64,000 nt of DNA from Auanema rhodensis (taxonomy: Eukaryota > Animalia > Nematoda): NCBI GenBank assembly GCA_964057225.1, contig OZ059898.1:10664001-10728000 (forward strand), read 5' to 3'. The notes under the pieces were generated by a model that worked only from the letters and a program-made list of their open reading frames with translations, did no database searches and was not told the DNA's origin. The translations under genes and the position numbers were made by a program. Below, in pieces: positions 1-31,414 of this stretch; positions within the stretch are counted from its first letter, which is position 1, and each line of letters begins with the position of its first letter.

Positions 1-2133
1 TTTGCCCACACTTTTTGCAAAATTTCTCATTGCAATTGTGCGGTCTATCAGCACGTACTCTGTGATAATGATCACAGTTTTCACATGTCTGAATTTAGTC
101 ATGTTAAATTTTATATATATTTTTTAAATTACCTTAAACATTCGACATGTTTTTCTAATATGCCTGTCAAAGCATTGACGAGTTTTGAACAAAACTCTAC
201 AACTATCACATCTTATGCTACTCTCAACCACATTTTCCATCGAATTACATTTTAAGGTGTGGCATTTCTTACACTTGGCTTTACATCTATGCAACACTGT
301 TTTGTAAGATAATTTACAGTGTTGGCATATAATACCATCAAAAATCTGTGATCTACTACAAGTTGTAATACAGTCATAATGATTATTTCGGTAGCCTAGT
401 GTTACCACTTTGCTAGCCGTTTCATTAAAGATACGCTGAATAGCGTACATACGCTGTCCAGGTGGCCTAGCGTATACTACAAACTTATAGTCTGTATTAC
501 AACTTGCAATAATATTTAAATGGTTCAAATTATAATTTGGTAAATGTACAGAAATACCACACCTATTCAATAAATTGATATGATGTGGTTGATTTGGCAA
601 CAAGATGTAGTTGCGACGAAGATTTTGAATCCTCCGCTTCTCAACAACATCTTCTGCTGTCTCTTCATCGGCTCTCCACATTCCCACAACTGCTGCTCTA
701 GCCAGGCAATGAGTGTCAGTGTTTTCAATTGTGCCAGGTATTTTGAGTTCGGCATCAAAATAGAAACCAACTCTACCTTCACCAGGCATCAGGCTTGGCT
801 GCACCGGTCTTTCATCAAACACATACATTTCAATATTCATTGCCTGGCTAATTACAGCCTCTCGCTTTGATTGCTGTACCTTGCTGATGGCATTCATGAT
901 GGCAACGCCATCCAAATGCTCCCTTCTACGGAAATCCATAAATATGGATCCCTTTTCAAAGGATGGGTGCTCTATTGATAAACAAAATAGTGCTTTTTGT
1001 TTATCTGGCACACCACTTTCAGCAAGGCACCGATCAAGGAACTCATTAAATAGCCGCGGCATGACAACATGCATTGGCTCATTAATGTTTTCCAAATGTG
1101 GGAACGTGAGCGATCTAACGACCACGTTGGTAAACCGATCAGTGCGTTTTATGCGTCGGTGTGACCACTATAATACACACTTTTTATAATGGTTATTTAG
1201 TTTAGAAATTTAGTTTAAATATAAATAATTTTTGTTTATAACTTTTAATAAATTTACTTTTCTTTAAATTATTTTTATATTCTTTCATTAAAAATGAATG
1301 GCATTTGATTTTTAAATATAAAGTTTTTTCTTTTATAAACATTTGTTAATGTTTAAAAATAAATGAAAAGGTCAAGATGGTGTTTTATTATTTTACTAGT
1401 TCAAAATGTTTGAAATATTTATAATTTGTAAGAATTCAAAATTGGTTGAAAGAAAGATATATAGTGAGATGAAATGTAAAGATTTTAAAATGAATGCTGT
1501 TCAAAAGAATGAATATATAAGTTTCAAAATACTTGCAATTTGTTTGATAAAAGATATAGATTGAGATGAAATGTAAAGATGAGAGAGAGAGAATTTTATG
1601 AATGGAATTGAAAAAGAGAAATAAATTTCAAAATGTTTTCAAAATATGCAACTGGAGCAAGAGAAAATTTCATGTTTCAAAAGATATATCATGAAATAAT
1701 ATATAAATAAAAGATCGCACCTCTATTTTACAGACATCGTTGAATGTCGCTCCATATCCGACTTGCCCTCCACTGGTTGATGGGGTAGCGGGATCCCATT
1801 CGCTTAAAAAGAAAAAACTAAATGTTATAATTTTTAATATCGCTTACTCATCACTGTCATCCAAGGTTATTACTTCAATAACCCTTGATGATGAGGGCCC
1901 ACTGTTAAAAGTGGGTGATGTGGGCTCACAGAGCTCGATCCCACCAGCCTCGGTAAACTTTATACGTTTACTAAAAAACAAAATATATTTAAAGATTCAA
2001 AATTGTGTTAAATTACCTGAGCTGATTAATCTCTTCATAATCAAATCCTAGCTCTTCACATAAACGTTTATAACTAAAAAAAGAAAAAGTTTACAAACAA
2101 ATAATCAAAAAGACGCAACCTATTAGCAGCCAT
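1..2133 (-). CDS. Maverick protein-primed DNA polymerase B gene, N-terminal part (OTU-like domain and Cys/His-rich region); spliced, 3' end outside window
   Basis: Exons 2120-2133, 2017-2073, 1848-1970, 1721-1802, 133-1167 and 1-88 join in frame through GT-AG introns: MAANSYKRLCEELGFDYEEINQLSKRIK...QVGYGATFNDVCKIE|WSHRR...NTDTHCLARAAVVG...NNHYDCI...CQHC...CDSC...|TCENCDHYH...CKKC. This layout matches Polinton pPolB N-termini. The sister copy (element B) links the same first exons to a clear pPolB exonuclease fragment. Confidence 0.75.
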
Positions 2134-2532
2134 TGTACCTTGATATAATGAATACATCAGTCTACACATTGCTGTTGGCATTGTAATTTGTTATGTAACA
2201 TGGATTTAGGTACAGCTGTCAAAACTAGCAGTTGCGATAAACTTTAAAATAAATAAGCATATTGAATACATCTGTTTTTATTGTCCCCATCGGATTAATT
2301 TTTGTTATTAGTTCTTATTAAATTAACTTTATGCGTTTCATTGAGGTCAGCGCAACTGTTTGTTAATCCCGTCGTATTTACCTTCAATGTGTGCTCTATT
2401 TAGTTATTGTATTGTTATATTAGTAAAATAAAGTTTAAAACTAATCTTTTATTATAATTTGAAACCTTTACTTGTTAGAATGAATATAATTAATAACAAT
2501 TCGCAATTTCAAAAATTAATAATTTAATGTCA

Positions 2533-2683
2533 TTCTTATCGAATTAACTTTCGATATGTGTTCCATTAAATTTTGGAATTTTATATCGTTCTTATCGAAT
2601 TAACCTTCGATATGTGTTCCATTGAATTTTGTATTTCATATCGTTCTTATCGAATTAACCTTCGATATGTGTTCCATTGAATT
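2533..2683. repeat. Tandem repeat, 55-56 bp x ~3; each unit has an ATCGAA-N6-TTCGAT hairpin (Maverick subterminal)
   Basis: ttcttatcgaattaaccttcgatatgtgttccatt starts at 2533, 2589 and 2644; a mirror copy lies at 4020-4207. Confidence 0.9.
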
Positions 2684-3269
2684 ACCCATAACAAGTACGG
2701 TGAACAAAACGATATACATGCAAAAATTTTACTGTTTTTTTAAATAAAAACAATACAAACACAATACAATAAAAATTAAACAAAATAAGTAAACAAACAT
2801 TATTAATAAATATAATAAAGAAATAAAGAAATAAATAAAATTTAAAAACAAATTTATATATTCAAAATTTAAATATAATTTATATATAAAATTTAAAGTT
2901 TAAATATGATTTATATATATAAAATTTAAATATTTAAAGTTTAAGTTTAATATAATAAATGAATAAAGTAATAAAATTTTAAAACAAATTAATATATTTA
3001 AAATTTAAATATAATTTATATATATAAAGGTTAAATATAATTTAAATATAATTTATAAATATAAAATTTTAATATAATTTAAATATTTAAAATTAAAATT
3101 TAAAATTAGATTTTTTTTTTCACTTAATATATTTAAAAATTAATTCAAAATATATAATTATATATATACATTTAAAAAAGCATATTTAAATTTGATTTAA
3201 AAAAAAAAATTTTAATCATGCTTTAAATCATGATTTTTAAATTTAAAAAAGTAAAATCCATGAACCATG

Positions 3270-3424
3270 ATCCCAAAATATGATTTTAACAGCTGACGCT
3301 CAAAAATATGTTTTTGACAGCTGACGCGCCCCAAAAGTATGTTTTTAGCAGCTGACGCCCCCAAAAGTATGTTTTTGACAGCTGTTTGAGGGCGTGGTTA
3401 GTAAATTTTGCACGGCTCTCTACT
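3270..3424 (-). repeat. Terminal inverted repeat of Maverick A with ~30-bp CAGCTG(ACGC) subrepeats
   Basis: Four CAGCTG-containing units followed by gggcgtggttagtaaattttgcacggctctctact. Confidence 0.9.
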
Positions 3425-4019
3425 GATAGCTAATGTATTTCATAACTATGTTCAAGAATAGAATAAATGTTTCGTAATATATTTATTGAACAATAAATTT
3501 TTATTTAAAATTAGAACATGTGTTAACATTTTGTAAAAGTTTCTTTTTTACAAAGTGTCTGGAAATGTTGTACTTGTAATCGGATGTGTACAAGTCTGTT
3601 TTTCGCAACAATCCTGCGTTTCCTCAGTGGGATCCAACATTTTGAATTAGTGTTTCCTAAAAATAAGAGTGTACCACAGTAGAGAGCCGTGCAAAATTTA
3701 CTAACCACGCCCCCAAACAGCTGTCAAAAACATACTTTTGGGGGCGTCAGCTGCTAAAAACATAATTTTGGGGCGCGTCAGCTGTCAAAAACATAATTTT
3801 GAGCGTCAGCTGTTAAAATCGTATTTTGGGATCATGGTTCATGGATTTTCCTTTTTTATAAATTTGTTTTTAAATTTTATTTATTTATTATATTTATTAA
3901 TAATGTTTGTTTACTTATTTTGTTTATTTTTTATTGTGTTGTGTTTGTATTGTTTTTATTTTAAAGAACAATAAAATTTTTGCATGTATATCGTTTTGTT
4001 CACCGTACTTGTTATGGGT

Positions 4020-4207
4020 AATTCAATGGAACACATATCGAAAGTTAATTCGATAAGAACGATATGAAATACCAAAATTCAATGGAACACATATCGAAGG
4101 TTAATTCGATAAGAACGATATGAAATACCAAAATTTAATGGAACACATATCGAAGGTTAATTCGATAAGAACGATATGAAATACCAAAATTTAATGGAAC
4201 ACATATC
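4020..4207. repeat. 56-bp tandem repeat x ~3.3 (inverted copy of 2533-2683)
   Basis: tggaacacatatc recurs at 4027, 4083, 4139 and 4195. Confidence 0.9.
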
Positions 4208-4223
4208 ATTATATCAAGGTACA

Positions 4224-4510
4224 ATGGCTGCTAATATGTTGTGTCTTTTTGATTATTTGTTTGTAAACTTTTTCTTTTTTTAGTTATAAGCGTTTATGTG
4301 AAGAGCTAGGATTTGACTATGAAGAAATCAATCAACTTAGGTAATTTAACAATATTTTGAATTTATTTATACATATTTTTTTTTTAGTAAACGTATAAAG
4401 TTTACCGAGGCTGGTGGGATCGAGCTCTGTGAGCCCACAGCACCCACTTTTAACAGTGGGCCCTCATCATCAAGGGTTATTGAAGTAATAACCTTGGATG
4501 ACAGTGATGA
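4224..4510 (+). pseudogene. Duplicate of pPolB exons 1-3 (element B), truncated
   Basis: Near-identical reverse complement of 1848-2133. Confidence 0.8.
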
Positions 4511-4569
4511 GTAAGCGATATTAAAAATTATAACAATTAGTTTTTTTGTCAAAAATTTAATCATTTATA

Positions 4570-4842
4570 TTTTAAAGATAGTTATTTATTAGTGCTTTTA
4601 CCCCTATCAGCGTTACCCAAGGCATTTGGTGTACCTGATATGAGTAAAGCACAGTTTCCTTACCTCTATAATCATCCAATAAATTATGGCAAAGTGTTGC
4701 CATCTTTACCACCAAAACAGTACTATTGTACTGCTAGAATGAAAGCAGAAGACCTAGCTTCATTCAATATTTGGTATGAAGAGCGTAATCAAAGAGCGTT
4801 TGATTTTGATGAAGAGCTTTTGGAATATTGTAGGACAGATGT
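4570..4842 (+). pseudogene. pPolB 3'-5' exonuclease region fragment
   Basis: FKDSYLLVLLPLSALPKAFG...KAQFPYLYNHP...YY...M...F..WY...FDFDEELLEYCRTDV, the type-2 PolB Exo III YCxxDV motif; cut by the terminus at 4843. Confidence 0.85.
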
Positions 4843-4995
4843 CAGTAGAGAGCCATGCCGAATTCACTAACCACGCCCCCAAACAGTTGCTAAAAACATA
4901 CTTTTGAGGGCGTCAGCTGCTAAAAACATACTTTTGGGGGCGTCAGCTGTCAAAATCATATTTTCGGCGTCAGCTGTGAAAAATATACTTTTCCT
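4843..4995 (+). mobile_element. Nested Maverick terminus of a related subfamily
   Basis: AGTAGAGAGCCATGCCGAATTCACTAACCACGCCCCC plus CAGCTG repeats; differs from the A/B termini at several positions. Confidence 0.85.
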
Positions 4996-5211
4996 CCCGA
5001 GGCAGGCTCTCGAGCCTGCGCATGGATCAAAATGCATGATTTTTTTTAAAATCTTTTTTAAAATTATTTTTTAATGTATTATTTTAAATGAATTTTTATT
5101 ATTTATATATTTGTTAATTGTATTTGTAAATATTTTTAAAATTATTTCTTTTTAAATTTCTTTTTAATATTTATATATGTTTTAAATATTATTATTTAAT
5201 TATTTCTTTTT

Positions 5212-5377
5212 TTCGAGCTATAACAAATTCCCATGGTCCTTGAGGAAGAAAAGTATTTTTCAAAGGGACTTGTACAGTACGAGTGGATTCAACACCTAAT
5301 GCCGACGCTGGTATATCACCATAGTTGATATTAGGTAAAAGAGCTTGTGCAGATTTTGAATCTATCAATTTAGCCAT
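5212..5377 (-). pseudogene. Maverick major capsid protein N-terminal fragment
   Basis: MAKLIDSKSAQALLPNINYGDIPASALGVESTRTVQVPLKNTFLPQGPWEFVI resembles the Polinton double-jelly-roll capsid start (PPTQ..IE....P......PIEF.I). Confidence 0.65.
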
Positions 5378-5429
5378 TCAAATGTGAAACGACCGCTCAC
5401 GAGTGATGCACAACCGCTTATGAGGTTTT

Positions 5430-5635
5430 GTGGTTTTGCGTCGTCGCAAATACGTAATTGTCTGCAGCACTTATTTGGGCCACCTTTCAAAAATGCTCTA
5501 GAGGCGTATGGTGATGCAATGTCTACTCCCTATAGTCATTTACTGATTGACAATCATCCTTTAACAAGTTAGAAGCAGCGTATACTATCTGATACAACAG
5601 CGGAGAACCCTATTGTTTATGTTGCGCCAAAACTC
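5430..5635 (+). pseudogene. Maverick packaging ATPase (A32/FtsK-HerA-like) C-terminal fragment with premature stop
   Basis: SQIRNCLQHLFGPPFKNALEAYGDAMSTPYSHLLIDNHPLTS*KQRILSDTTAENPIVYVAP matches the AY.DA...PY..LLID..P tail of Polinton ATPases. Confidence 0.7.
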
Positions 5636-5639
5636 CTTG

Positions 5640-5850
5640 TTCTGTTTCCTCATTTTCTTTTGAACAAATTGAAATTATTGTTGAAATTGGATTTAATATT
5701 GTGAAAAATAATAATTTTCTTTTAACTAACAAGGAATATAAAACCCTCTTGCCCATATCTTCATTATTACGTCCAATAGCTTTGATACGCACACCGGAAA
5801 AGGCTAAATCATTATTGGCAACGCTTTCACACAAACAATTGAAAACAATA
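5640..5850 (+). pseudogene. Fragment of a conserved small Maverick ORF
   Basis: QIEIIVEIGFNIVKNNNFLLTNKEYKTLLPISSLLRPIA is reminiscent of the E...N.L...L....L..LR.LA Polinton accessory protein; context supports this. Confidence 0.4.
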
Positions 5851-5855
5851 GTTAC

Positions 5856-6257
5856 ATGTGGTATTGCCTAGAAAATAGAGCTATACCCGATTATAAAAAG
5901 GCTGAACTATACGAAGACTTGATTGCTCGTCTCAAAAACTATAGAGAAAGTATAGATGCGCCCATAGTACAAGTGGAAAATGCTGATCCGCCTCTATTGC
6001 CAGAATACAAGTTGCCAAGAAAGTATAACAATTTGTGGAAGAAATTTCCAGAGGTGCGCACAAACAAGAGTAATCAACTTGTGATTAATAATGAGGCTGT
6101 ACCAAACACCAATATTACAAAAATTTTAGATTTTGTATTGAATAAAACAAAAACGGAGCCCAATGGATTTTCAGTCTTGTCAAAGTTTTTAGCCAGTAAA
6201 GACGTATCTAGTTCTAACAAAAAACAAACTAGAAGAGAGTCAGCAGACAATGACTGA
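5856..6257 (+). pseudogene. Fragment of a conserved Maverick accessory ORF
   Basis: KAELYEDLIARLKNYRE...NKSNQLVINNEAVPNTNITKILDFVL...PNGFSVLSKFL resembles the conserved Polinton protein motif ELV..G..IPGSNI.DL......P.G...F. Confidence 0.55.
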
Positions 6258-6450
6258 GTTGACGTTGTAACTAGAGCTGAACCGGCTGTTACAGACTTGG
6301 ACTCTACTATATTACCTAGAACGCCTCGTCATCGTTAAGCTGTTATTCGATATTCACCATCACGGGTTCGTACACTCAAAAGTAAAAGGTCAAAAACTTT
6401 TGATATTGCCGCCGAAACATATTACACACCACGAGAAGGAGACTCACAGA

Positions 6451-6618
6451 ATGGCCAAGGTCGTAAAAGGTTCTACATTAGATTATGGAAATGATATTTT
6501 GGCGAGCATTTATTACGATATAAAACATCCAGCTTCATATACATCAGCCAAGAATTTATTATCGCAAGCACGAAAACACGGCATTTCAAAGGTACAAGTT
6601 GATGATTTTTTGCAAGAT
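6451..6618 (+). pseudogene. Maverick retroviral-like integrase N-terminal fragment
   Basis: ILASIYYDIKHPASYTSAKNLLSQARKHGISKVQVDDFLQ matches the IYYDP..PASY....L...A.......V..FL start of c-integrases; fused directly to the right TIR. Confidence 0.75.
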
Positions 6619-6734
6619 TTGTTTTTGACAGCTGACGCGCCCCAAAAGTATGTTTTTAGCAGCTGACGCCCCCAAAAGTATGTTTTTGACAGCTGTCTGG
6701 GGGCGTGGTTAGTAAATTTTGCACGGCTCTCTAC

Positions 6735-7070
6735 TCATTCCGAGCTCATCTTTGCAAAATTGGACTGTTGTATACTCCTTTGTCCAACAGTAAATGAAAA
6801 GAATAAAGTTTGTATACGATAAATGAGAGCCTATTTAATTTAAATTAGTTATATCTTAAAAGTGAAGCTATACCTTCTAAAAATGTTTTTTTTTAATTGC
6901 TGTTCTTTCCTACAGCTTTTTTTGGGGCATCTCCAAGGTTCACGCTCTATTGAGGGCTTCATTTCAGATTGGCAGATGCTACAGATTATAGCATCTGGTA
7001 AAATCCCCTTTTCTTGCAAAAATCGAATTGCACTTTCTTTAGTTGCAACTTTATCTCTCAGAGCGAACAT
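6735..7070 (-). mobile_element. Merlin/IS1595 (ISXO2-like) transposase 5' part, frameshifted and truncated by the Maverick end
   Basis: AIRFLQEKGILPDAIICSICQSEM...WRCPKKSCRK, then (frameshift in an A9 run) TFLE|intron 6831-6873|GSHLSYTNFILFIYCWTKEYTTVQFCKDELGM, ending at the TIR. Confidence 0.75.
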
Positions 7071-7571
7071 GATGTCAGATTGAGTTTGAGATTTCGATTG
7101 TTTTTTATATGAATTTATTATAATTTATTTAGTTTTTAAGCAACTGTGTGCATTTCGACTGCACTTGAGCCAAAACAAGAATAAAATGTCAATTGTACTA
7201 TTTGTGCAAGCTCTTTTATAATATTTTGGGTACCCCATAAAATATTAATAAACCTGTTCTTTAATTTTTTCAAATTCATTTTTTGATTCTAGTGTTTTTC
7301 AACACTCGTACTATTTTTATCGATTTTTGTTCGAAAAACTATTGATTAAGATGAGAAATAAATGGAGACTTTAGAAACTCTGAAAAAAAATGATCATCAT
7401 TAAGTCTAAAATTGATCTTCTACATGAAAGTGTTTAAGAATTTTGGAAGTATGTACATAAGGAATGTATCGAAGAGGTAAAAATATAAAATTAATCAAAT
7501 AATTAAATAGAAAATGAACCATAAAGAAAAAATTACCATGGCTCAAAAAGGATTTGGAAGAAAGAAAAGAA

Positions 7572-7788
7572 AGCTGCCGATTTTGTAACAAAAAATCATT
7601 TCAGTGAACGATGTGGAATATACTGTTCCAAAGTAACTAAATTCACCCGTGCTGTATCATTAAAATTATGTCTGCAATGTATCAACAGACATAAAGGAGA
7701 ATGTAGAAAAGCGAAAATATGCAAATTTGGATGATAAAGAAATACAATTTTATGTGTGTTTTTATGCCCCAAGTGTGGTAAACAGTAA
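7572..7788 (+). pseudogene. Degenerate BEL/Pao-like gag zinc-knuckle relic
   Basis: SCRFCNK(frameshift)NHFSERC...LKLCLQCINRHKGEC...ICKFG** shows tandem CCHC spacing with a frameshift and stops. Confidence 0.5.
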
Positions 7789-8130
7789 ATAGATATTTTA
7801 TATTTTATGAAAGTCTCTATGGAATTATTCAAATGAAATTGGAAACTCAATTTAAGTTCTTGGGAATGTTTTGAGTGAAATCGAAATGTCACAAAAATAA
7901 TAAGAAAAAAGATAAAAATAAGTGAAACATGAAAATATGATAAACTTTAAATTTTATTTTTTCCTCTTGAACGTGTATAAGCGGTCGAATAACAACACGT
8001 GGAATCTACGTCTAATTTACGTGAACGTTTGCTTTTATTTTTCAGTTGTTGATCATGTATCTATTATAATCTGTTTGTTCTAATTTTTATTTTTATTTTA
8101 TATTCTTATATTTTTGAGAGAGTTCACAAG

Positions 8131-8352
8131 GTGTGTAACTCTGTTCTCGTAAAAGATAGAAAGATGCGGTTTTCTTAATTGCCCGTGTCCATATTGGTCT
8201 AGAACCATAATATTATTCATATTGATGCACAATAAGCATGACTTCCAAATTTACGCGAAATTTAAATTATGCTAACTAAATGTACACGTCGTATGCACAT
8301 GATGTGTAACTCGGATCTCGTTAAAGATAGAAAGATGAGGTTTTCTAAAATT
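8131..8352. repeat. ~50-bp dispersed direct repeat pair
   Basis: gtgtaactc.g.tctcgt.aaagatagaaagatg.ggttttct at ~8133 and ~8304. Confidence 0.75.
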
Positions 8353-8539
8353 ATTGACAAAAATTTTCAAATAATTCTATGCAAAGTATATACTATTCGA
8401 TTTGTTTTGACGAGACAAAGACGATGACCTATGTTATTTGGCAGAAAGATTTTCTTTTTTCTTTTGGGTGAAATTGGAGATTTAAGTGTACACCTATATC
8501 AGTAATTATCTCGCTTCGTCTTTAAGCTAGTTCAAATCT

Positions 8540-8721
8540 GATAATTTAGATTGACGCAGCTCAAAAAAGCGCATCGAATGCACTATGCGACATTAAAAAA
8601 AGTTATGACCGTTTGAAAAATGATGTGTTACAGTATGTTGACTCAAAATTGCTTTTCGAAAATGTTTGACGAAAATAGTGCATTCGATGCGTTTTTTTAA
8701 GCTGCGTCGATCTAAATTATC
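8540..8721. repeat. MITE-like inverted repeat: 47-bp arms (3 mismatches), 88-bp spacer
   Basis: gataatttagattgacgcagctcaaaaaagcgcatcgaatgcactat (8540-8586) pairs with its reverse complement at 8675-8721. Confidence 0.8.
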
Positions 8722-9143
8722 TTTTAAATTTTCTGAAACACCGGATGCTGTTGATCAAAAATGTTGACCTCGCTCTCCGTTTTGCTTGAGTTCTGAGTAG
8801 CGCATCTCATTAAAAATACAAACACGGATCAATCTAATTTTTTAACATGGGTACAAAATGATGTAAGTATAGAAAAATTTTGAACAAGAAGGCAATTGAT
8901 CAATTTGTATTTGACTCAACACATTGAAAAGCGTCAAGTGCATTGTCATATATGTAGAAAACATAAATGTTGAAATAAGTCATAGGCCAATTTAATATTC
9001 TGAAGTTTGTTAATCTATTTATTATAGCTGATTTTTAAATATTCTGGAGCTTTACTTCTGGTTAAGCTAGCTTAGCTCCTGATTGTTCATGTTTTCTTCT
9101 CTACGTTGCACTCTCATGATCAAAATATATTATCGGCATTTTT

Positions 9144-9174
9144 ATTATTGCTTTGGCTTAGCCTAAGCAATAAT
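9144..9174. other. 31-bp palindrome with GGC-TTA-GCC core and telomeric seed; candidate programmed-DNA-elimination breakpoint motif
   Basis: ATTATTGCTTTGGCTTAGCCTAAGCAATAAT: 14 of 15 arm positions pair; contains GCCTAAGC, the nematode telomere repeat; lies at the TE/gene boundary. Confidence 0.55.
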
Positions 9175-9331
9175 CTATATAGTGAACAAAGGTTCAGGCA
9201 ATCATCGTAGCATGATATAGGTATTCGAAATCACAAAATCTATATGAATAGAAATTTATTTAAAGGTATATTTAAATATAAGTCCAACAACAGATTAAAA
9301 ATTCCCCGCAACATGACAGAAAACAAAGTGC

Positions 9332-9649
9332 TTATGCCACTACATCGATCAACTCAGGTGGTAAAGTAGCTTTTGGATGTTTATTTTGAAAATGTTGTTT
9401 ATATGTTTTTGGATCTGGCATCTGAGCCTAGAAATATACATTAAAATAACAGTTTTGACTTTAAAAAAATCGAACCATGCATACAGTGCATTTGTGAACT
9501 AATGCTTTTAAGGCAGCACTCTTTTGATCGCAACCTTGAGCCCTCTTTGCATCCGCCGCTTTCTTCGCAGCTTTCTGAAGATCAATTTAATAACTTCAAT
9601 ATTTTAGACGAACCTGTTGAGACTGAATTTTCTGTTGCCCTCTAGCCAT
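9332..9649 (-). CDS. ZNF706: Zinc finger protein 706 homolog (3 exons)
   Basis: MARGQQKIQSQQ|KAAKKAADAK...KALVHKCTVCM|AQMPDPKTYKQHFQNKHPK. Confidence 0.93.
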
Positions 9650-10019
9650 GTATACAGCTGCTATAAACAAGAAACAAATGAATAATAATTACAATTGTTA
9701 TAATATATACACATTTAATGATAATAACCAAACACTAATTGAAAACCACATGGAAATATCAACAAGATTTATTTAAAAACTGGTTGTTCTTTCAATTAAT
9801 ACTGCAAATTTGTCCGAATATCAGGGTGATCGTTGCAGGAGTTTTTAACCAGCTACATTGCGCTTGCACTTAAAGAATAATATGTTCTTGTCTACTTTTT
9901 CGTTTGCTACATGACAAGCTAGAAATACGCACCAACAGAACTGTTGCATCATGATATTCAAAAGACTTTAATAATAAATATGCACAGTAAAATCGGAAAT
10001 GGATTGGGAAATAATCTCT

Positions 10020-10548
10020 TTATAAATCATTCGTTTTGGGCACTTCCATATCTTTAATAATTTCGTATATTGATTGTCTGTTTCTATGATGATCAACTTT
10101 AGAGAGTATATTGGTCATCTGTTTTTGAAATTCTTCATCCTCAGTGTGTGACTGGTTCATTCTCTAAATAATAATTTTCTTAATTTTCTTAATTTTATGG
10201 AAAATACCTCATGGAAACTTTTTCTTCGCTTGTCTCTCTCTTCGCGCTGCTGTTTCAGAACTTCCATCATTTTATCGTTGTGATCTTTTAATCTTTGTTC
10301 CATCTGTGACATGTACTCATTCAAGTGATCGAGTTGGGCATCCAATTTACGAATTTCTGAGTGTTGTATATGTATGAGCAAACTTTAAATCATTAGGAAG
10401 AAATATGTAGAAAAAAAATAATACCTTCGGTTTCCTCATTGGTTTCTCCCTCATTGAGTACATCTAAACCTCTTTGTAAAATCGATTGAGTGTTCCTGTT
10501 ATTTCTCAATTTCACTTTTGCATCGTCATTTGAGCTACTATGATCCAT
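10020..10548 (-). CDS. bbln-1: Bublin coiled-coil protein (C9orf16/UPF0184 family)
   Basis: EIRKLDAQLDHLNEYMSQMEQRLKDHNDKMMEVLKQQREERDKRRKSFHE|RMNQSHTEDEEFQKQM. Confidence 0.8.
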
Positions 10549-10929
10549 ACTAAAATATCAATTTGTATTATAATTTATAAAACGAATCATTTTGTTCAAG
10601 GCAATGAAAAAACATAAATATAACACTCATACAAAATACGAAGCTACGACAGAATCTGATAAATGAGAAAACTACACTAAAGGTCTGAAGAGCACTTTCC
10701 TCAAAACCGGCTTCTCCTTCTTTGATAGACATAGCGAAGACTAATACCAAGAGAAAACATAGATGTACCGTCGCACATTTGGTCCAATCAATACATCATT
10801 CAATAAAACAGGAAACCACGCCTCATGAATCATGTTCATAGTTGATAACAAAAACTTTCGGAAGAAACTATTATCGAAAAATTTTTAAATGAAATGAATT
10901 TATTCATTGAAAAAGTAAATTATCTTAAA

Positions 10930-11582
10930 TTAAGCAAGGCGGAGAATCAAATGCAATCCAGAATCGGTGTCGACAATATCACTGACTTGCCCAATATCGA
11001 GGGCAAAAGACGCATCTTCAAATGGTTTTTGCATCTGTTGCCGACCAAACATCTAAAATGGATGTAACTAGTGCCTTGAACAAACATAAAGCCTACTCCT
11101 AGATCGCCACCACGTTTAGCTGAACTACAATCGCTGAATTCGCCGGCTAGTTTTTTAAATACGGCGTGAGAGTCTCCAGAATCTCTTATTTCTTCTAGGT
11201 ACCCTGCATACCAACAATAGTATAGATGTTAAACCCTGCTTCTAAACCTTGTAGGATTGTTCGTGCATCTTCTTTGGAACGAGTAATATTGTCACTCCGC
11301 CAGCTTGAAGGTCTTCGACTTCCTGCATGTTTTACCAGAATATGAGCACAGCGAACTTCTTTCAAATCATACCCCTGTTACAATTCCGATTATAAGAAAA
11401 CATTGATATTCGAACCTTTACAAATGCAGATTCCGTGGGCCGTTCCCATTGACTACGCCCAGTAGCTTGATTGAAATAGTATGCTTGATCTAAAAACGAA
11501 AAAAATAGCAAAGGAAGGATGAGTTACCATTAGTTCGACTCATTCTTTTCTCCCAGCCCTGTGGCAATTCATTGTCAGACAT
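10930..11582 (-). CDS. pinn-1: Pin1 peptidyl-prolyl isomerase (WW + parvulin)
   Basis: [18 protein letters not shown]...SQWERP...[20 protein letters not shown]...[13 protein letters not shown]...[12 protein letters not shown]...[13 protein letters not shown]. Confidence 0.95.
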
Positions 11583-11695
11583 CTGAAATGAACATTGGAA
11601 CCGAATAACAACAAAAAATAACAGTACGCAATTGTAAATAACAGCTAGTACAGAAGTTATATAATCGTAATATAATAAACGTTTTATTTTCTTAT

Positions 11696-13824
11696 TCATA
11701 TTCTAAGACACTCTGTAAGTTTCTCCATCTTCACTAGTCTTCTCATATCAAATTTTCTCATGTTAATACTGACATAAGCACCATCAAACACCCTTTCTGA
11801 AAATGCCCTGCCTGCTGCCAAAGAATGCATTACATTCCTAAAAATATTAACGTTTATAAAAATAATGTTTTTACACCTTGATCCAAAACCACACATCATG
11901 TGGAGATTATTATAGAGCGGATGTTCACCAATTATAGGAGATGAATCAAATACATTTATAGACTCTTCGGTTAAAAAAGCTGATTTAATCTGTAGAAAAG
12001 ATCAAATTATACTTTATTTCGCGTGAAATAACACTTACAACAGCAGATTTGAAGGAAGGAATTCTGTTTTCAAGAACCGGTGCAATTTCATTGAAATAAG
12101 AATCATAATCAACTTTTTCATGACTCTTAATCTTGATCTTAAAGTGAAGAGAATGATTGGAAACAAAAATAGGACTTGCTTTATTCGTGATATGCCTGCC
12201 AACTATGAATGTGTGACCGATATCGGCTCTCTGACAATAAACACCAGACTGATCCAAAAACATGGGCATATCATTAGGAACATCTGGAGCATGCAAAACA
12301 AACTTTGGGAGCTTCACGGATCTAATGGGAATAGGTATAGCTAGAAGCCCCTTGCCCTTACCTAAATATTTTATTTTTGTACATCATACCAAGATCTTTT
12401 AAGTTACTACCTATTCCCGCCATTTCGGCTACAGCGCCAGCCCATGGTCCTGCCGCATTAACGATCAAATGAGCACGGATAGGGCGCGCAGACGCGTCTG
12501 TCATTTGAGGCTTGACCTAAAATAGCAACAATATATTCGAAAAATAAATCAAAACTTACATAAACACCTGTAATTCTTTGAGATCTCCATTTTTCATCAT
12601 CGGCAATATCCATATCCGTGACGCTATGAGCTTCTGCCTTTGGTCGCAATCGCTCAAATTCAAAACCTTGAACTTGACCTTTAACATACTATAAACAATT
12701 ACATGTATAATAATCAAGAAAGTGATTTATATAGCAACACAAAAAACTCACTTGCACACCTAGTGTTATGTTTTTCTCTCTTAAAGCAGCTAAAAGCTGC
12801 CATGTATTAACAATTCCTTCATTTTCCAAACCTTTAAAGAGTTAAGGATGAGCTACATTAGTAAAGTACCTAAAGTTCCTAGAACAACGTTATCAAAATT
12901 CATGAATGGGTAACGCTCTTGAAGCTCGTCTTTTTTCAACAAAGCTATTCGAGCTCCCTTTTCACTTAAATAAAGATTATTTTGGGGTAAATGATTACAA
13001 ACATACATTTGGATTTTCCAGATCTCACGCATTCGATCAGCATCCGCTTCTGTATGAGCAAGTTGAAGAAAACCCATAGGTAATATATTTATATGTGGGG
13101 CTTGGTTATCTAATGTATTTTGTTTTTATTTCACTGCTATCTTACAAACCTAAAATTTGCAAATGTTCACCGGCATGCCTCAAAAATTCAGCTGTGAAAA
13201 GCGACATCTCAATATGTTCGGGAATGGAAAATTGTTGGGTGAAACTTCCAATAGCGTTCATGGAGTTACCATCCATAAAATTAGAATTGTCTTCTACAAC
13301 TACAACCTATAATTGTCAAAACAATCTTCCATAAATATATTTATCTTAAGATAGAGACATTTCTTGAAATAAAGTAAAAATAACCTTCAAATCCTCATCC
13401 CGAAATCTTTGTTTCAACCAATAAGCCGTTGATGAACCTGGGAAAATTATTTATATTAAGAGGTATAAAAAACCATAAACTGAACCAGTTAGACCGCCAC
13501 CAATAATCAAAATTTCAGCACGAAATGGAAAAACTTCATTATCAATGACAGAACGTTTCATATGCGCAATTGGATTTCTTCTTCGGAATGAATCTTTTCT
13601 AGCCTATTACTGTATTTTTTATAACATTATATTTATAACCTTACTTCCAAATATCTTCGTTTCCATCTTCGAAAGTCATATGTAAGTCCATGCCATGTAC
13701 GCTTTAAAACATCTTCTCCAGGCTCATAATGACGCTCATTTTCGAAGCTTTGCCAGCACGAGACAGAACTAGTGCATATTGCTCGAGAAGGTATTATACT
13801 TTTGCAAATGGGAAAAGCTTTCAT
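11696..13824 (-). CDS. FOXRED1: FAD-dependent oxidoreductase domain-containing protein 1 (start codon uncertain)
   Basis: IIGGGLTGSSTAYWLKQ, GSFTQQFSIPEHIEMSLFTAEFLRHAGEHL, NAAGPWAG, PIIGEHP...MMCGFG motifs across ~10 exons. Confidence 0.88.
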
Positions 13825-14332
13825 TAACGGTTCTACTGTTAAAACTGCGATTTTCAAACAATGCACACTTGTTCTACTAAAACTATAGAATTTAATTGAT
13901 TAAAGGCTTTGAAAAATATACATGCGATTTTAATTAAATATTACTCTCACTTATGTACAAAACCATTAGCAATTGAGAACGACAATAAAATGATTTTAAA
14001 TTTACAAAATTAAGTATCTAATTCAAACAAAAAGCAAATGTCCAATCTAATTCAGTTTAAAATGTAAAGGCTGTCCTCTCAGCCGATGTATTATATGAAC
14101 CATATACAAATCCCACTGGCGCATACTTTGTGCTTGTACTTTACCCGAGTTTATGAAATAAATTAAGTATCCTGTACAATTTCACCAGTTTAATTTGCAT
14201 AGTAAATTAAGAAAAATATTTTTATTTATACTTGATAAACTACTGTTTTATATATATTTTTATATTTCCTAATCTTTTGCTAAACATGTTTCATTTTACT
14301 TTAATTCAGATTTTTTACGTTTTAAAATATAT

Positions 14333-17300
14333 ATGAGTGTGCTTGATGGCTATGAACTATGGAGGGATTGCATACGCTGGCTTGTAGATGTAAATGTTCT
14401 ATTCAACGATCATAAAGTGGCCCAACCTTCTGCTACTATTGAAGAATTTGCGGCTTTACTAAGGTATACTGACAAATGTAGTAATAATAACTTTTTGATG
14501 ATTTTTTTTGTGTAGGGATGGAGTACTTTTGTGCCACTTAATAAATCAATTAGTTCCTAATACCATTGATCCTAAGCATATCCCATTCAAAGTTCATCAC
14601 TTATCCGAGGTAATTTATTTTTCTGCTATATAATTTATATTGCTATAGTTTCAATGCGAAAAAATTATTTGTTTGTTTCTGGATGCTGCCCAAAAAGTTT
14701 TTCTGCTGGATCAGGCTGATTTATTTGTAGCTTGGGAATTGTATTGTATGACCGATTTTATGAAGGTTCTTCTACCGTTTGATTCTTAATAGAAATATGA
14801 TTTTAGGTATTAAAAACATTATCTTGCATATCTAAGTCAAATATATGTAAACGATTAGGAAAAAGGTGTTTTCAAATATAATTTTGTTGTCTAATTTATT
14901 TTTAGACCATTTCCATATAATGATGTGCAAGATTCAATTCTCGCACCGCTAGAAGAAGAGGAAATTTACAAGTAATATTCTCGTTTAGCTAATTTATGAT
15001 ATTTATTTTTAGGAATTTGCAGGAAAAAGTTGAAATCGACAATAATGATTTTAGTTATCGTCCTCTGTAATGTATGTTTCTTAACCCCATGATAATAGTT
15101 TATTTCCAGTGCTGAAGAAGATGATAAAATATATGATCATTTTGTGGCTCGACAAGATAGTGTTAGAAGCTGGGAAAACGATGTTTGTTTTGTTTCGGAT
15201 TGGCGTAATAAGTGAACAAATTTCAGAGTTGGTCGTCTTTTCAACCTGTTTCTAAAAGGGAACATTCTATCAAAGAGTTACTTGATACTGAGAAAAACTA
15301 TGTAGAAAAAGCTTTAAATATGATTATGACCAAATTTCATGCTCCATTAAAGCAGTTTTTTAATGATCCTAAGGATCATGAAATTGTTTTCATGAATATA
15401 GCTGTAAGAATTGATACGAAGAGCTGCATAATCGAAATATCTTCCAGGAATTGTGGACATTACACCAAACGTTTTACATTGATTTGCAGCATGCTGTATT
15501 TCGCACTTTAAAAATAACTACTAATGATATTCGTCCACCATTTTTAGGGAAATATATTGGGGATGTGTTTCTACAGTAATTATCATGGTTGTCCGACGTT
15601 CTGTGATTAAAACATTACAGACACAAGGAAAAGTTCATTGCTTATGGTCGATATTGTATGTTACTAGATGATTCAAGGAGGAAATTAATAGATATTGAGC
15701 GAACCGATTCAGTACTACGAGCTAAAATACATGTCGCATTACAACTTCAAATAGTTTTGATTATTATGATGTTTCAGTCATGTACAGAATTGGTGAATGA
15801 TAACCAATTCAAGCTTCAAGATTTATTATGCATTCCAATGCAACGGGTACTCAAATATCATTTATTACTTAAGGTATTCTGTCCTTATTTATTCAATCTA
15901 ACATTGGAGCACTCAGGAAATGTTAAAAGCAACATTGGTGGAATCACCTGATCGCAACTCACTGGAGCAAGCAAAAGATGCAATGGAAGATCTAAGCCAA
16001 TATGTTAATGAGATGAAACGAGATTATGACGATATGTTACTCATAAAAGAAGTTGAACGTAGTATCATTGATCTTTGCATGGTTTGTGTTTTTCAAATAT
16101 GTTAGAAACTTTAGTATGTATAGCCAGCTGATACTAGTTTATTGGAATATGGGCGATTAAACACGGATTGTGAAGTTAAAGTTAGTGAATCCATAGATAA
16201 AACACAGAGTAAACAGAAAAATCGTCATGTTTTTTTGTTTGATAAAGTTCTATTTATTTGCCAAACGAAACGGGTAAACACGTTTTCCAATTAACAATTA
16301 ATTGAAATTGAAATTAAGGGGAATGTATATTCTTACAAAGGCGCATATCTGGTTCACGAATTGAGTATAGAGCATACTGAAAATCGGTTTGGAACTCTTC
16401 GGTACCCAATATTTTAAGACATAAATTGAATACAGGTTTTATTTGCAGGAACTTCAGCTCAAGCAATAAATATCAGGTTCATTTATTAAGAGAAACATCA
16501 GATAAGGATAAGAATTCGGGAAATTCTAATACGGAGCCTGTACGGTATATAACCCTTAGTTTTAAAAACGCGAATCAAATGGATAAGTGGATAACTCAAT
16601 TTCACCTTAGCAGGTTTATATTATATAAGCGGAAATGTGAATTTACATATTTGCTTTAGAGATAATGTTTTTCCCCAAGCAGCTATTGCTACTCGGCATA
16701 AAGCCAAGTTCCGTACTTTTCTAACCAATGAAGCTCACTTCTGTAGTATATGTAATAAATTTTTAAAAGGACAAATGTTTCAAGGATATTCTTGTGACTG
16801 TAAGTTTTAATAATATAGGCGTTGATAGAATGCACTTCAGGTTGTGGTGGGATTTTTCATAAAGCTTGTTTGGGTCTTAGGTCTTGTCTTGGAAAACGAC
16901 TACCTTCTATTACGGCTAACGCGTCATTTAGTGTAAATGATAATTCTTATAGAAAACGGATTGAATCCTGTCAGTTTTCATTGTTATCTGCTTTTTTTAC
17001 TTTTTTATTTCTCAGTTGATTCCGGTGAACACGTTATGACTATAAATCGTAGTTTATCGTTGGATCCTCTATTTTTAAACTTCGAAAAAGATGATGTTAT
17101 TGAAGTCGTCCAATCTCATGATGACAGGACTTTTCGTGTACTCCCTGTTTAACCATTTGTTCTCTAGTGCGTTTTTCAGGGACGACACCTAAATTCAAAT
17201 TTATATGGATTGGTGCGACTGGATGATGTACGTCGCATAAGGGTGGGTTTATTGCTTTTAGTATTTTCAATAATGCTAGACTGTAGGTCAACTCTCTCGT

Positions 17301-18209
17301 GGGCAATTTTGATTCATTTACTAATCCAAATGTAAATTCTTCATCGGATTTAGGAACATTTACCAGCGCTACTCGTATCGACCGAAAAGAATCTACAATT
17401 CTTCCCCGTCGGCCGTTGTTGGGCTTCTAAAAATTAAACTAGTATGAAAATAATTTTTTTAGAACGACACCAACTCACCAACTTTCGAATTATCAAAACA
17501 CTAACGTTTTGCATGAAACATATTATGTTGGTGAAATGCCGAGACAAGAAGCTGAATCAAAACTAAAAAACACAGTAAATGGCACATTCCTAGTCCGATT
17601 TAGTACCAATCAAAATCGATATGCAATTAGTATCAGGTAAAAATATATCCCTATACTATGATAATTTGGTTTACAGTTACATGGGTGATGTTAAGCATAC
17701 AATAGTAGAAGAAAGAGCAGGAGAATTTTTTTTTGATGAAGTCTGTAAATTTCCAAGTATTGTGGTACACTTTAGTTTTCGTTTTCTTTTTAAAAATTTA
17801 ATTTAGGAATTAATTAATTACTACAGAAAAACTAGCTTATCTGAATGCTTCGAATTACTCAACACCGAGTTGAGGGAGCCCTATAGAGAATGCAGAGTAC
17901 GTTTATTTTGCTTTTTTTTATTAATTATTAATTACCAGATCTTTTTTTCACGTAACTTTAATTTTTTCTAGGTGTTTTGTGCTATTCATGATTATGATGC
18001 ATCAGAAGGAAAGTTTTTGAGGCTACGAAAAGGTGATATTGTACATTTGATTGACACAACTGGGGAAGAAAGAGGCTGGTGGAAAGGAAGAATCAACGAT
18101 GGATTAGAAGAAAGGGTAAAACGATTAAATACGATTTTTTTAAATTACATAAATTTTAATTAAGGTTGGATTTTTCCCTAAAAGCTATGTTGAAGAATAT
18201 AATAGCTAG
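14333..18209 (+). CDS. vav-1: Vav Rho/Rac GEF (CH-DH-PH-C1-SH2-SH3)
   Basis: YELWRDCIRWL..LRDGVLLC (CH); ELLDTEKNYV..LQDLLCIPMQRVLKYHLLL (DH); FLFDKVLFIC (PH); C1 cysteines; NGTFLVR (SH2); AIHDYDA..GWWKG..GFFP (SH3). Confidence 0.95.
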
Positions 18210-18483
18210 TTCCATTATCTGTAGTTTGCCCCTAGTTAAGATCTCACTCTTATCTATTTGTACTTTGTTTACAACAAATTAACACATATTTTCTTTGTAA
18301 ATAAGATATTTATGTTTTTATCATTAAAAATGTATTATTTATACGGTTACCGATTGCCTTAAACAATTTATCCACGTTTTAATTGGATTTTTTTTGGTTC
18401 TTTCCGCTTAAGATATTAGATGCTTTACTACAATTATTTAACTTAAGATTTGTATTTATTAAAATAAATATTTAGGATTAAAC

Positions 18484-18868
18484 ATGAATATAAGTCAGGA
18501 GCATTTAGAAAAACAATTCATTTCTTCGGGTGAACGAGATCGTGTGAAGGTGGATTAAACCAAACTATTTCTGATAAATTACATTATTTTTGAAGGCAAT
18601 TCTTGTAGAACGTTTAAAAAGTGAAGGATGGGCTGATGAAGTTAAGCAACTTATTCGGAAAGAAATCATGGAGCAGGTAAGCAAGGTGCAATCATATTTG
18701 CACCTGTATCTTGTTTTACTTCAGGGAATTAAAAATCTGGATTCTAATGCTTTGTATGATAAATTGAAAGCTCCAGCTAGAAGATTAGTTTCCAATTCTA
18801 CTAAAGAAGAATTATTCAAATCAGTTCGACAATGGGTCTCGGAACAAACCGGAGTCACGGACATTTAA
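18484..18868 (+). CDS. ENY2: ENY2/Sus1 transcription and mRNA export factor
   Basis: LEKQFISSGERDRVK|AILVERLKSEGWADEVKQLIR...ARRLVSNSTKEEL. Confidence 0.85.
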
Positions 18869-19013
18869 TTTTGAATATGATTACTATTAACTTTTTACAA
18901 TATCATTGTATGTTTTTATCTACTTGAGATAATCAGATATAAATTGATTCTCTATTAGTATGTCAAGGTTGCACATTGGAAAATTTTTGGGCAATTTTTT
19001 GTCTTTGATAAAG

Positions 19014-19106
19014 ATGTCTGTTCCTACGGTTGTAAGAACGGCTTCTGTTGAAGATGAAGCTTGTTCTTATATCCCGGATGTCAAAATAATTAAGCCAAAG
19101 GTAATT
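19014..19106 (+). pseudogene. Orphan duplicate of rml-3 first exon (breakpoint duplication)
   Basis: MSVPTVVRTASVEDEACSYIPDVKIIKPK|gt with no downstream exons on +; near-identical to 20629-20715 on the minus strand. Confidence 0.85.
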
Positions 19107-19926
19107 CATGCCTCTGTGTCAGTTCTTATATGTCAATTCTCATATGTATTTGTTTGCCCTTGCAATTAATTAGAATACTTTCATTTAGATCCAAAGGGAA
19201 TAGTTCTGAATATATGTTTGGAGACATGAGCAAGAATTTTGTCTATATTAGTTATAGCATTTTTTTTAAATTGCAAAAAATCATTTATTTGGTTTAAAAA
19301 ATTGAACTTAATGGAACTCTGGGGAAAGAAGAGATGGTCTAAAAAAATCATGTCATATACTTTGATTTTTTGAAATTCTAGTTTCACTAGGTATTTTTAA
19401 ATAAAATATCAAACTAAAGATAAACATAGAGCATTATGCATGCATTGATACATATTAAAGGTGATTTTAAAAAAAGATATATAAAAAGTCTGGTGATATT
19501 GACACGTTAACCTCCAGGGTTAGATTAAGATGAATTTAGAAAAAACAGAATATTTGCGAATCGGACGGTAAAAATATTTGATTTCAGTAAAGATCAGAAC
19601 TTTCTATTGGAATATTACTAATTTTACCACATATTTTACTGACGGATTACAGGAAACATGTTGATGCATCTGCAAATTTAAAAATTAATATATACATAAC
19701 ATGTATATATTAGTTTTCTAAACTTAATTTTACTAAATTCATAAACAAATTATCATTATTCCGTTTATAGTGTTATAGATCATTAATAAAAAATTTAAGC
19801 AGTTTTTTGTTAACAATATTATCAAGTAGTACGTAATGATATTACATTCATATTACATATTGTATAATTTATTTCTTTTCATCAAATAACACACGTAACA
19901 TACACGTCGTCCACCATGCTGGCAAA

Positions 19927-25237: not shown

Positions 25238-25440
25238 CTTCAGAGCTTATGTCTATCAGAGAAGAATTAGAACAGCATAATAATTATCTCAATAGACACA
25301 ATTATTCTCATTTCGGGTTCCATTTCATATTAGAACATATCTGTATTAGATGTATTTTATTCCATAGTTCTATCTAGCATGAATAGTTATAATTTCTATG
25401 AACAAGACAAAAAAACGTAACAAAGTAACAAAGTAAGAAG

Positions 25441-27719: not shown

Positions 27720-27842
27720 CTGAAAACCATGCATTTATTAAAAATAAGTTTAAAATATGAGAAACTAGAAGAATTTGATTATATTGCTAAAAATTAATTC
27801 AGAAGTCTTAAAATTAGTTTGATTTTTTAAAAATTAGTCCTA

Positions 27843-31337: not shown

Positions 31338-31414
31338 TATTTTGATTTTATTTAAGTATTGTATTAGATTTCAATGAAGATTAAATTAGAAATATCGTAT
31401 TCATAAATGTTTTA

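What the first reader, a model, noticed from the sequence alone, without database searches (positions are those of the whole stretch)
9144..9174. Candidate programmed DNA elimination / telomere-addition site at the junction of the transposon block and the gene-dense block
Seen: ATTATTGCTTT-GGC-TTA-GCC-TAAGCAATAAT is a 31-bp near-perfect palindrome. The right arm contains an exact GCCTAAGC (the complement of the nematode telomere TTAGGC) and the left arm a one-mismatch mirror, GCTTTGGC. Everything to its left is transposon debris; the first conserved gene (ZNF706, polyA signal ~9255) ends under 100 bp to its right. Known: several rhabditids eliminate germline-restricted DNA in somatic cells. 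From memory, breaks in Oscheius tipulae occur at a ~30-bp degenerate palindrome whose central GGC/GCC primes telomere addition. Inference: this is such a cut site, with the left side germline-restricted and the retained somatic chromosome starting (GCCTAA)n-GCC at ~9161.
Basis: partly seen in the sequence, partly recalled or inferred. Interest (0 to 1): 0.88.

Follow-up and report, generated by a model that had tools for sequence, protein, structure and literature searches.

The report
Known Auanema chromosome-breaking site
This 29-31 base palindrome is very probably a real site where the nematode Auanema rhodense cuts its chromosome in body cells, discards the transposon-rich left side and caps the gene side with a new telomere. 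The system and its 28 sites were published in 2026, so it is a correct call on something already known.

Summary
The palindrome at 9144-9174 is real and unique in the window. A site with this core is not expected by chance even genome-wide (about 0.03 expected).

Its 29-nt core (9145-9173) is 14+1+14 bases with GGCT/AGCC around a central T. That matches the published description of the Auanema rhodense Sequence For Elimination (SFE; bioRxiv 10.64898/2026.08.27.747507), which resembles the Oscheius tipulae SFE.

The nearest named protein relative is from Auanema sp. JU1783.

- Contigs fork exactly between 9159 and 9160. This is the base where a (GCCTAA)n neo-telomere would first differ from germline sequence.
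- Single-copy sequence to the left is 3 to about 100 times shallower than sequence to the right.
- In the probable source run the ratio is 53.4/434.1 = 0.123. The paper's eliminated-to-retained coverage is 29x/236x = 0.123.

Telomere letters themselves were not seen, because the loose-end table was truncated and only one read-laying run was allowed.

Verdict: a functional programmed-DNA-elimination break site, retained to the right and eliminated to the left, almost certainly one of the 28 published sites. This scan has already flagged and followed up sister sites elsewhere in the same genome.

The parts
9145..9173 (.). 29-nt SFE-type palindrome (14 + central T + 14), 13 of 14 pairs complementary
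   Evidence: The layout matches the published A. rhodense SFE description: 29 nt, two 14-nt halves, a variable central base flanked by four conserved residues.
9155..9163 (.). Core GGC-TTA-GCC, also readable as GGCT-T-AGCC. GGC/GCC are the telomerase-priming triplets of the O. tipulae model.
   Evidence: Sequence. The role of GGC/GCC comes from PMC13060919 and 10.1101/2022.08.19.504554; its role here is inferred.
9160..9168 (-). Nine bases of the retained arm that are identical to the telomere repeat (GCTTAGGCT on the minus strand). The inferred seed or join for the new telomere lies somewhere within them.
   Evidence: Sequence. High-depth contigs start at 9160 in X1 and X7.
9159..9160 (.). 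Fork between the germline and somatic forms, and the depth step
   Evidence: table 8. In X1, contig 7887-9189 has depth 50.6 and the contig starting at 9160 (9,648 nt) has depth 434.1. In X7, contig 8718-9175 has depth 3.4 and the contig on 9160-9768 has depth 228.3, with 19 further letters unlike the germline.
1..9159 (.). Germline-restricted (eliminated) flank: polymerase-B transposon debris, inverted duplications, a MITE-like repeat and some single-copy DNA
   Evidence: Low depth was shown only for the single-copy parts 7102-7909 and 7887-9159. Content.
9160..64000 (.). Retained somatic DNA, gene-dense
   Evidence: Full depth was shown for 9160-12000, and for 9160-18807 through the single X1 contig. 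The rest is inferred from the exon-bearing ORFs.
9332..9649 (-). First retained gene, ZNF706-like, with exons 9649-9614, 9574-9476 and 9427-9332. The poly(A) signal AATAAA is at 9260-9255.
   Evidence: Exon 3 alone gives a weak zf-met2 hit (E = 0.029). The splice sites were read by eye.
10157..10381 (-). Exon of the second retained gene (a coiled-coil protein, weak UPF0184 hit)
   Evidence: 87% identity to an unnamed protein of Auanema sp. JU1783. Pfam result.

Best explanation

Shown here:
- A near-perfect 29-nt palindrome with a GGC-TTA-GCC centre sits where germline-only DNA on the left meets DNA kept in all cells on the right.
- The germline and major (somatic) sequence forms part between 9159 and 9160.

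Inferred from the O. tipulae and A. rhodense papers:
- In early somatic blastomeres (from about the 12-cell stage) an unidentified sequence-specific factor, probably binding as a symmetric pair, makes a double-strand break in the motif centre.
- The ends are resected to 3' overhangs.
- On the right fragment the overhang ends in ...GCTTAGGC(T), nine bases already in telomere register. Telomerase pairs with this seed and extends it, so the somatic chromosome begins (GCCTAA)n joined in register to 9160-9168.
- That new end lies only about 70-95 bp beyond the 3' end of a ZNF706-like gene.
- The left fragment (transposon debris here, probably leading into a larger eliminated block) is lost. It may be capped transiently.
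For: - Motif anatomy matches the published text: 29 nt, 14+1+14, four fixed bases either side of the centre, AT-rich flanks, telomere added between positions 14 and 15. Read from the retained arm, position 14 is 9160 and position 15 is 9159, which is where the contigs fork.
- There is a depth step at that base in four runs from three studies: X1 50.6-53.4 against 434.1; X3 9-11 against about 1,000-1,700; X7 3.4 against 228; X9 4.9 against about 16.
- The X1 ratio of 0.123 equals the paper's 29x/236x.
- The ratio varies between samples, as expected if the share of germline cells differs.
- The X7 high-depth contig runs on for 19 letters unlike the germline beyond 9160.
- Chance is excluded.
- The genus is supported by 87% identity to an Auanema sp. 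JU1783 protein. Run dates (2019, 2023) fit the published A. rhodense data sets.
- Necessity and sufficiency of the homologous motif were shown by CRISPR in O. tipulae.
Against: - Telomere repeat letters joined at 9160 were not seen. The loose-end table was truncated and the 19 run-on letters of the X7 contig were not printed.
- All runs were contigs, so each depth is a single mean per contig, and the tool warns against reading depth finely.
- The published site coordinates (Table S6) and the sequence logo are images, so I could not confirm that this is one of the 28 sites or score it against the published matrix.
- The eliminated flank visible here is transposon-rich rather than the satellite that makes up most eliminated DNA.
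- The species name rests on earlier unchecked scan notes plus indirect matches.
Confidence: 0.9

Rival explanations
1. It is a non-functional SFE look-alike inside retained DNA. The paper reports four high-scoring matches in retained DNA that show no telomere addition.
For: Such sites exist. The immediate left flank is not satellite.
Against: Depth steps 3- to about 100-fold exactly at the motif centre in four runs, and contigs fork there. A silent look-alike would show neither.
Confidence: 0.03
2. It is a back-up (alternative) SFE lying wholly inside eliminated DNA. It may be cut, but it does not define a somatic chromosome end. The paper reports 15 such sites.
For: Alternative SFEs are common near true sites in O. 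tipulae and A. rhodense.
Against: The right flank is at full retained depth as one 9.6-kb contig in X1 and carries conserved, compact genes. No second SFE lies in the 55 kb to the right.
Confidence: 0.02
3. It is a structural polymorphism or transposon-insertion boundary. Under this reading the left flank is a minor haplotype and the palindrome is there by coincidence or is a transposon end.
For: The left flank is transposon-rich. The left/right depth ratio differs between samples.
Against: - APS4 is an inbred line.
- The fork falls on the one base predicted by telomere register.
- The X1 ratio equals the genome-wide eliminated/retained ratio.
- The palindrome is single-copy in the window and not part of any repeat family found.
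Confidence: 0.03
4. It is a hairpin with an RNA or DNA role for the neighbouring gene, such as a 3'-end or terminator element, unrelated to elimination.
For: The hairpin is stable and lies about 70-95 bp past the poly(A) signal of the ZNF706-like gene.
Against: It lies beyond the poly(A) signal, so probably outside the mature mRNA. No Rfam family matched. This reading does not explain the depth step or the fork.
Confidence: 0.01

Closest known systems
Auanema rhodense SFE (Gonzalez de la Rosa et al., bioRxiv 10.64898/2026.08.27.747507, Aug 2026)
   Same: The same genus and almost certainly the same genome. It is a 29-nt palindrome (14+1+14) with a conserved four-base block either side of the centre and AT-rich flanks. 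The join falls between positions 14 and 15. It sits at a switch from low-coverage to high-coverage DNA with the same 0.123 ratio.
   Different: Nothing was shown to differ. The visible eliminated flank is transposon debris rather than satellite, and there is no nearby back-up or mirrored copy such as earlier scan notes describe at other sites. I could not match it to a row of Table S6.
Oscheius tipulae SFE (Dockendorff et al. 2022; PMC13060919, 2026)
   Same: It is a degenerate palindrome of about 29 nt with a GGC, 3-4 nt spacer, GCC centre. The break is in the centre and GGC/GCC prime TTAGGC addition. The motif was shown to be necessary and sufficient. The A. rhodense authors consider the two motifs homologous.
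   Different: The arm sequence differs: the O. tipulae consensus starts TTTAGGT and this site starts TTATTGC. O. tipulae cuts only at chromosome ends and removes 0.6% of its genome, whereas A. rhodense also cuts internally and removes about 61%. This site is far more symmetric (1 mismatch) than the O. tipulae sites (3-8 mismatches).
Caenorhabditis SFEs (C. auriculariae, C. monodelphis, C. parvicauda; PMC13370393)
   Same: They are precise, motif-associated telomere-addition sites at the borders of eliminated DNA.
   Different: Those motifs are non-palindromic, are bipartite or 24 nt long, lie upstream of the addition site, and share no sequence similarity with the O. tipulae-type SFE.
Ascaris chromosomal breakage regions
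   Same: Both involve a somatic break, telomere healing and loss of germline-only DNA.
   Different: In Ascaris there is no motif, and healing is spread over 3-6 kb with about 1 nt of priming homology.

Membership tests
A. rhodense / O. tipulae-type SFE break site | A 29-nt palindrome of about 14+1+14 (A. rhodense), equivalent to N10-GGC-N3/4-GCC-N10 (O. tipulae) | tested here: met
   Positions 9145-9173 have 13 of 14 pairs, and the core is GGC-TTA-GCC with a 3-nt spacer. Definitions.
A. rhodense / O. tipulae-type SFE break site | Conserved GGC/GCC next to the centre, complementary to the TTAGGC telomere | tested here: met
   GGC is at 9155-9157 and GCC at 9161-9163. The retained arm carries nine bases in telomere register.
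A. rhodense / O. tipulae-type SFE break site | A score above the weakest true site with the published position-weight matrix | not testable with these tools
   The logo and Table S6 are images, and no supplementary text is held.
A. rhodense / O. tipulae-type SFE break site | Lies at a sharp switch between germline-restricted (low-coverage) and retained (high-coverage) DNA | tested here: met
   Contig depths step at 9159/9160 in X1, X3, X7 and X9, and the X1 ratio is 0.123 as in the paper. Caveat: these are contig means, not read depth.
A. rhodense / O. tipulae-type SFE break site | Somatic reads carry telomere repeats joined at the motif centre (between positions 14 and 15) | tested here: inconclusive
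   The fork is at exactly that base, and the X7 contig runs on for 19 unlike letters, but those letters were not shown. A scan of metagenome contigs for the predicted junction found nothing, as expected.
A. rhodense / O. tipulae-type SFE break site | The motif is necessary and sufficient for breakage (CRISPR) | not testable with these tools
   Shown only for O. tipulae.
Genome = Auanema rhodense | Sequence identity to that species | tested here: inconclusive
   - The best named protein hit is Auanema sp. JU1783 at 87% identity, so the genus fits but that strain is excluded.
- The coverage ratio, motif description and run years fit A. rhodense.
- The species name itself comes from earlier scan notes.

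The most novel reading that the evidence does not exclude
The single palindrome-breaking mismatch may be directional. The retained arm reads as a perfect nine-base telomere seed (GCTTAGGCT), while the discarded arm has the seed spoiled (GCTTTGGCT). If this held across the A. rhodense sites, it would bias stable capping towards the kept fragment. A second possibility is that this site borders a small, non-satellite, transposon-only eliminated island that differs from the satellite blocks stressed in the paper.
Probability: 0.1. Interest if true: 0.45.

Novelty: already known. Interest (0 to 1): 0.3.

Why it matters
Programmed DNA elimination in free-living rhabditid nematodes is a young field, and the enzyme that recognises and cuts the SFE is still unknown. 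A clean, almost perfectly symmetric natural site such as this one, with a gene 3' end about 70-95 bp from the future telomere, is a convenient substrate for protein pull-downs, CRISPR edits or END-seq. As a discovery it adds nothing beyond the 2026 A. rhodense paper. Its value here is as a positive control: reading raw sequence alone can pick out true break sites.

Tried and rejected
- I tried to see the telomere letters directly. Read laying allows one call, and its loose-end table was truncated (126 rows not shown), so the 19 run-on letters of the X7 contig stayed unseen.
- I tried to fetch the same contigs another way. Exact look-ups of six ORFs or proteins near the site found nothing on record.
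- A scan of metagenome contigs for the predicted telomere-plus-retained junction found nothing, which carries no weight.
- I tried to obtain the orthologous locus of Auanema sp. JU1783 through P0001. It is not on record, and the genome collection open to the search for related loci holds only bacteria and archaea.
- I looked for back-up or half sites. There is no second GGC-N-GCC palindrome. Half-site matches with up to 3 mismatches numbered 19 against 10 expected, and none is paired. There are no telomere repeat runs in the window.
- I looked for tRNA or Rfam RNAs near the site and found none.
- I rejected a de Bruijn-graph artefact of the palindrome as the cause of the contig break. The 31-mer and its reverse complement differ at three positions, so they are distinct words, and an artefact would not produce a depth step.

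Full report
**Observation**

The sequence at 9144-9174 is ATTATTGCTTTGGCT-T-AGCCTAAGCAATAAT. The repeat finder reports 15-nt arms, 93% complementary, with one base between them.
- The only non-complementary pair is 9154/9164.
- GCCTAAGC lies at 9161-9168. Its mirror with one change, GCTTTGGC, lies at 9150-9157.
- The 31-mer is unique in the window.
- Of eight GGC-N(1-5)-GCC cores in the 64 kb, only this one has palindromic arms: 10 of 11 flanking pairs, against 1-4 of 11 for the others.
- In 300 dinucleotide-preserving shuffles, 14+1+14 palindromes with at least 13 pairs appeared 0.023 times per window, and never with a GGCT.AGCC core.
- From base frequencies I estimate about 0.03 such sites by chance in a 181-Mb genome. 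The motif is therefore not a chance palindrome, even allowing for the many windows the first stage read.

**Organism and prior knowledge**

A paper search found the relevant literature.
- In Oscheius tipulae, breaks occur in a 29-bp degenerate palindrome, the Sequence For Elimination (SFE). Its conserved GGC and GCC are separated by a 3-4 bp spacer and prime telomere addition. The motif is necessary and sufficient for breakage.
- An August 2026 preprint on Auanema rhodense gives these facts:
  - About 61% of the genome is eliminated.
  - There are 28 chromosome-internal telomere-addition sites.
[quoted passage not shown] - Four high-scoring matches in retained DNA are unused, and 15 matches lie inside eliminated DNA.
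- Earlier notes of this scan name this genome as A. rhodense and had already followed up sister sites.
- My own partial check: an exon 1 kb to the right of the site (10157-10381, minus strand) has as its only database relative an unnamed protein of Auanema sp. JU1783, at 87% identity. The genus fits, and the strain is not JU1783.
- The site read as 14+1+14 (9145-9158, 9159, 9160-9173), with GGCT and AGCC round a central T, fits the published description word for word.

**Read evidence**

I laid 5,601 letters (6400-12000) on four runs from three studies, and all were available only as Logan contigs.

| Run | Left of the site | Right of the site | Left/right |
|---|---|---|---|
| X1 (probable source sample) | contig 7102-7909, depth 53.4; contig 7887-9189, depth 50.6; both identical to the window | one 9,648-nt contig starting at exactly 9160, depth 434.1 | 0.123 |
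| X3 | depth 9-11 | depth about 1,000-1,700 | about 0.01 |
| X7 (a 2019 study) | contig 8718-9175, depth 3.4 | contig matching 9160-9768, depth 228.3 | about 0.015 |
| X9 (a 2024 study) | depth 4.9 | depth about 16 | about 0.31 |

- In X1 the two contigs share only the 30 bases 9160-9189. That is what a k=31 graph gives at a fork.
- The X7 high-depth contig has 19 further letters beyond 9160 that are unlike the germline.
- All four runs therefore show a fork or a depth step at 9159/9160.
- That base is informative. If (GCCTAA)n is laid in register on the right arm, 9160-9168 (AGCCTAAGC) already agree with it, and the first disagreement with germline is at 9159 (A expected, T in germline).
- The same position is "between 14 and 15" when the motif is numbered from the retained side, as in the paper.
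- The X1 ratio of 53.4/434.1 = 0.123 equals the paper's 29-fold over 236-fold coverage for eliminated and retained DNA.
- The spread of ratios between samples is what different germline shares would give.

Caveats:
- Contig depth is one mean per contig.
- The loose-end table was truncated, so I did not see the telomere letters.
- The low-depth X7 contig also carries 19 unexplained letters after 9175.

**Anatomy around the site**

The left flank (1-9159) has no satellite. It holds:
- nested inverted duplications between 1812 and 4546, with 55/56-nt and 30/31-nt tandem sub-repeats;
- a fragment of a protein-primed-type DNA polymerase B at 4592-4870 (Pfam DNA_pol_B_2, E = 2e-5, just under the curated cut-off);
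- an intact 333-codon ORF (124-1125, minus strand) whose nearest Atlas clusters are eukaryotic polymerase-B/Endonuclease-7 transposon-like proteins (scores 0.80-0.87, a lead only);
- a MITE-like hairpin at 8540-8721, present in hundreds to thousands of copies.

This fits the paper's statement that half of the eliminated genes are transposon-derived, including polymerases.

On the right flank, the first gene is a three-exon ZNF706-like gene on the minus strand.
- Its exons are 9649-9614, 9574-9476 and 9427-9332.
- AATAAA lies at 9260-9255, and exon 3 gives a weak zf-met2 hit.
- The future somatic chromosome therefore starts only about 70-95 bp beyond a gene's 3' end.
- Further right the window is gene-dense.
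- No back-up SFE, half-site pair or telomere run lies elsewhere in the window.

**Mechanism**

Shown here:
- the motif;
- its position at the germline-only/retained switch;
- the fork at the telomere-register base.

Inferred from O. tipulae genetics and END-seq and the A. rhodense cytology:
- An unknown sequence-specific factor cuts in the motif centre in early somatic blastomeres.
- The ends are resected to 3' overhangs.
- The overhang of the right fragment ends in telomere register (GCTTAGGCT) and is extended by telomerase.
- The left fragment is degraded, possibly after transient capping.

**Rivals**
- A silent look-alike in retained DNA, or a hairpin serving the neighbouring gene, explains neither the fork nor the depth step.
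- A back-up site inside eliminated DNA is contradicted by the full-depth, gene-rich right flank.
- A structural polymorphism is unlikely for three reasons:
  - the line is inbred;
  - the fork falls on the one predicted base;
  - the depth ratio equals the genome-wide elimination ratio.
- A graph artefact of the palindrome is excluded, because the 31-mer and its reverse complement differ at three positions.

**Comparison and novelty**

The site meets every testable defining feature of the A. rhodense/O. tipulae SFE class. The direct telomere join, the matrix score and the genetic test remain open. It differs from the Caenorhabditis SFEs, which are non-palindromic and lie upstream of the addition site, and from Ascaris breakage regions, which have no motif.

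The authors found their 28 sites by mapping all telomere-bearing reads to this assembly, and this site shows their coverage signature. It is therefore almost certainly one of those 28. The finding is already known.

Two small details are untested leads:
- The site is unusually symmetric, and its only mismatch leaves the retained arm a perfect telomere seed while spoiling the discarded arm.
- The visible eliminated flank is transposon debris rather than satellite.

**Verdict**

I put confidence in a functional break site at 0.9. Interest is modest (0.3) because the system is published.

Noticed in passing
window 1812-4546: There is a large nested inverted duplication (arms 91-98% complementary, centre near 3550). 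It is built from a transposon-like unit with 55/56-nt and 30/31-nt tandem sub-repeats. More copies of the 30-nt array lie at 4884-4992 and 6620-6695.
   Followed up: partly
window 4592-4870 (+) and 124-1125 (-): A DNA_pol_B_2 fragment (E = 2e-5, 24 bits against a cut-off of 25.8) and an intact 333-codon ORF with a Cys-rich C-terminus and no Pfam hit. The ORF's nearest Atlas clusters are eukaryotic polymerase-B/Endonuclease-7 transposon-like proteins (scores under 0.9, a lead only). This is probably debris of a polymerase-B-encoding element in the eliminated flank.
   Followed up: partly
window 8540-8721: A MITE-like hairpin (47-nt arms, 94% complementary). Its segment 8675-8713 is extremely abundant in all four runs: summed word depth is 9x10^4 to 6x10^5, against 16-1,100 for single-copy DNA. 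Many contigs have loose ends at 8675 and 8713.
   Followed up: no
window 8718-9175 (run X7, record 19): The low-depth germline contig of X7 matches through the whole palindrome to 9175 and then carries 19 letters that do not lie on the window. These are unexplained; they could be an error or a chimeric tip at depth 3.4. The high-depth contig of the same run also has exactly 19 unlaid letters beyond 9160.
   Followed up: no
window 9154 / 9164: The single palindrome mismatch makes the retained arm a perfect nine-base telomere-register seed (GCTTAGGCT), and the eliminated arm reads GCTTTGGCT. Whether this asymmetry is general among A. rhodense sites could not be tested.
   Followed up: no
window 10157-10381 (-): An exon of a coiled-coil protein (weak UPF0184 and Sec10_N hits). 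It is 87% identical to an unnamed 130-aa protein of Auanema sp. JU1783, the only relative found among proteins of 41-130 aa.
   Followed up: partly
window 36937-37302 (+): A long exon whose sequence looks by eye like an enoyl-CoA hydratase. This is an ordinary conserved gene in the retained part.
   Followed up: no
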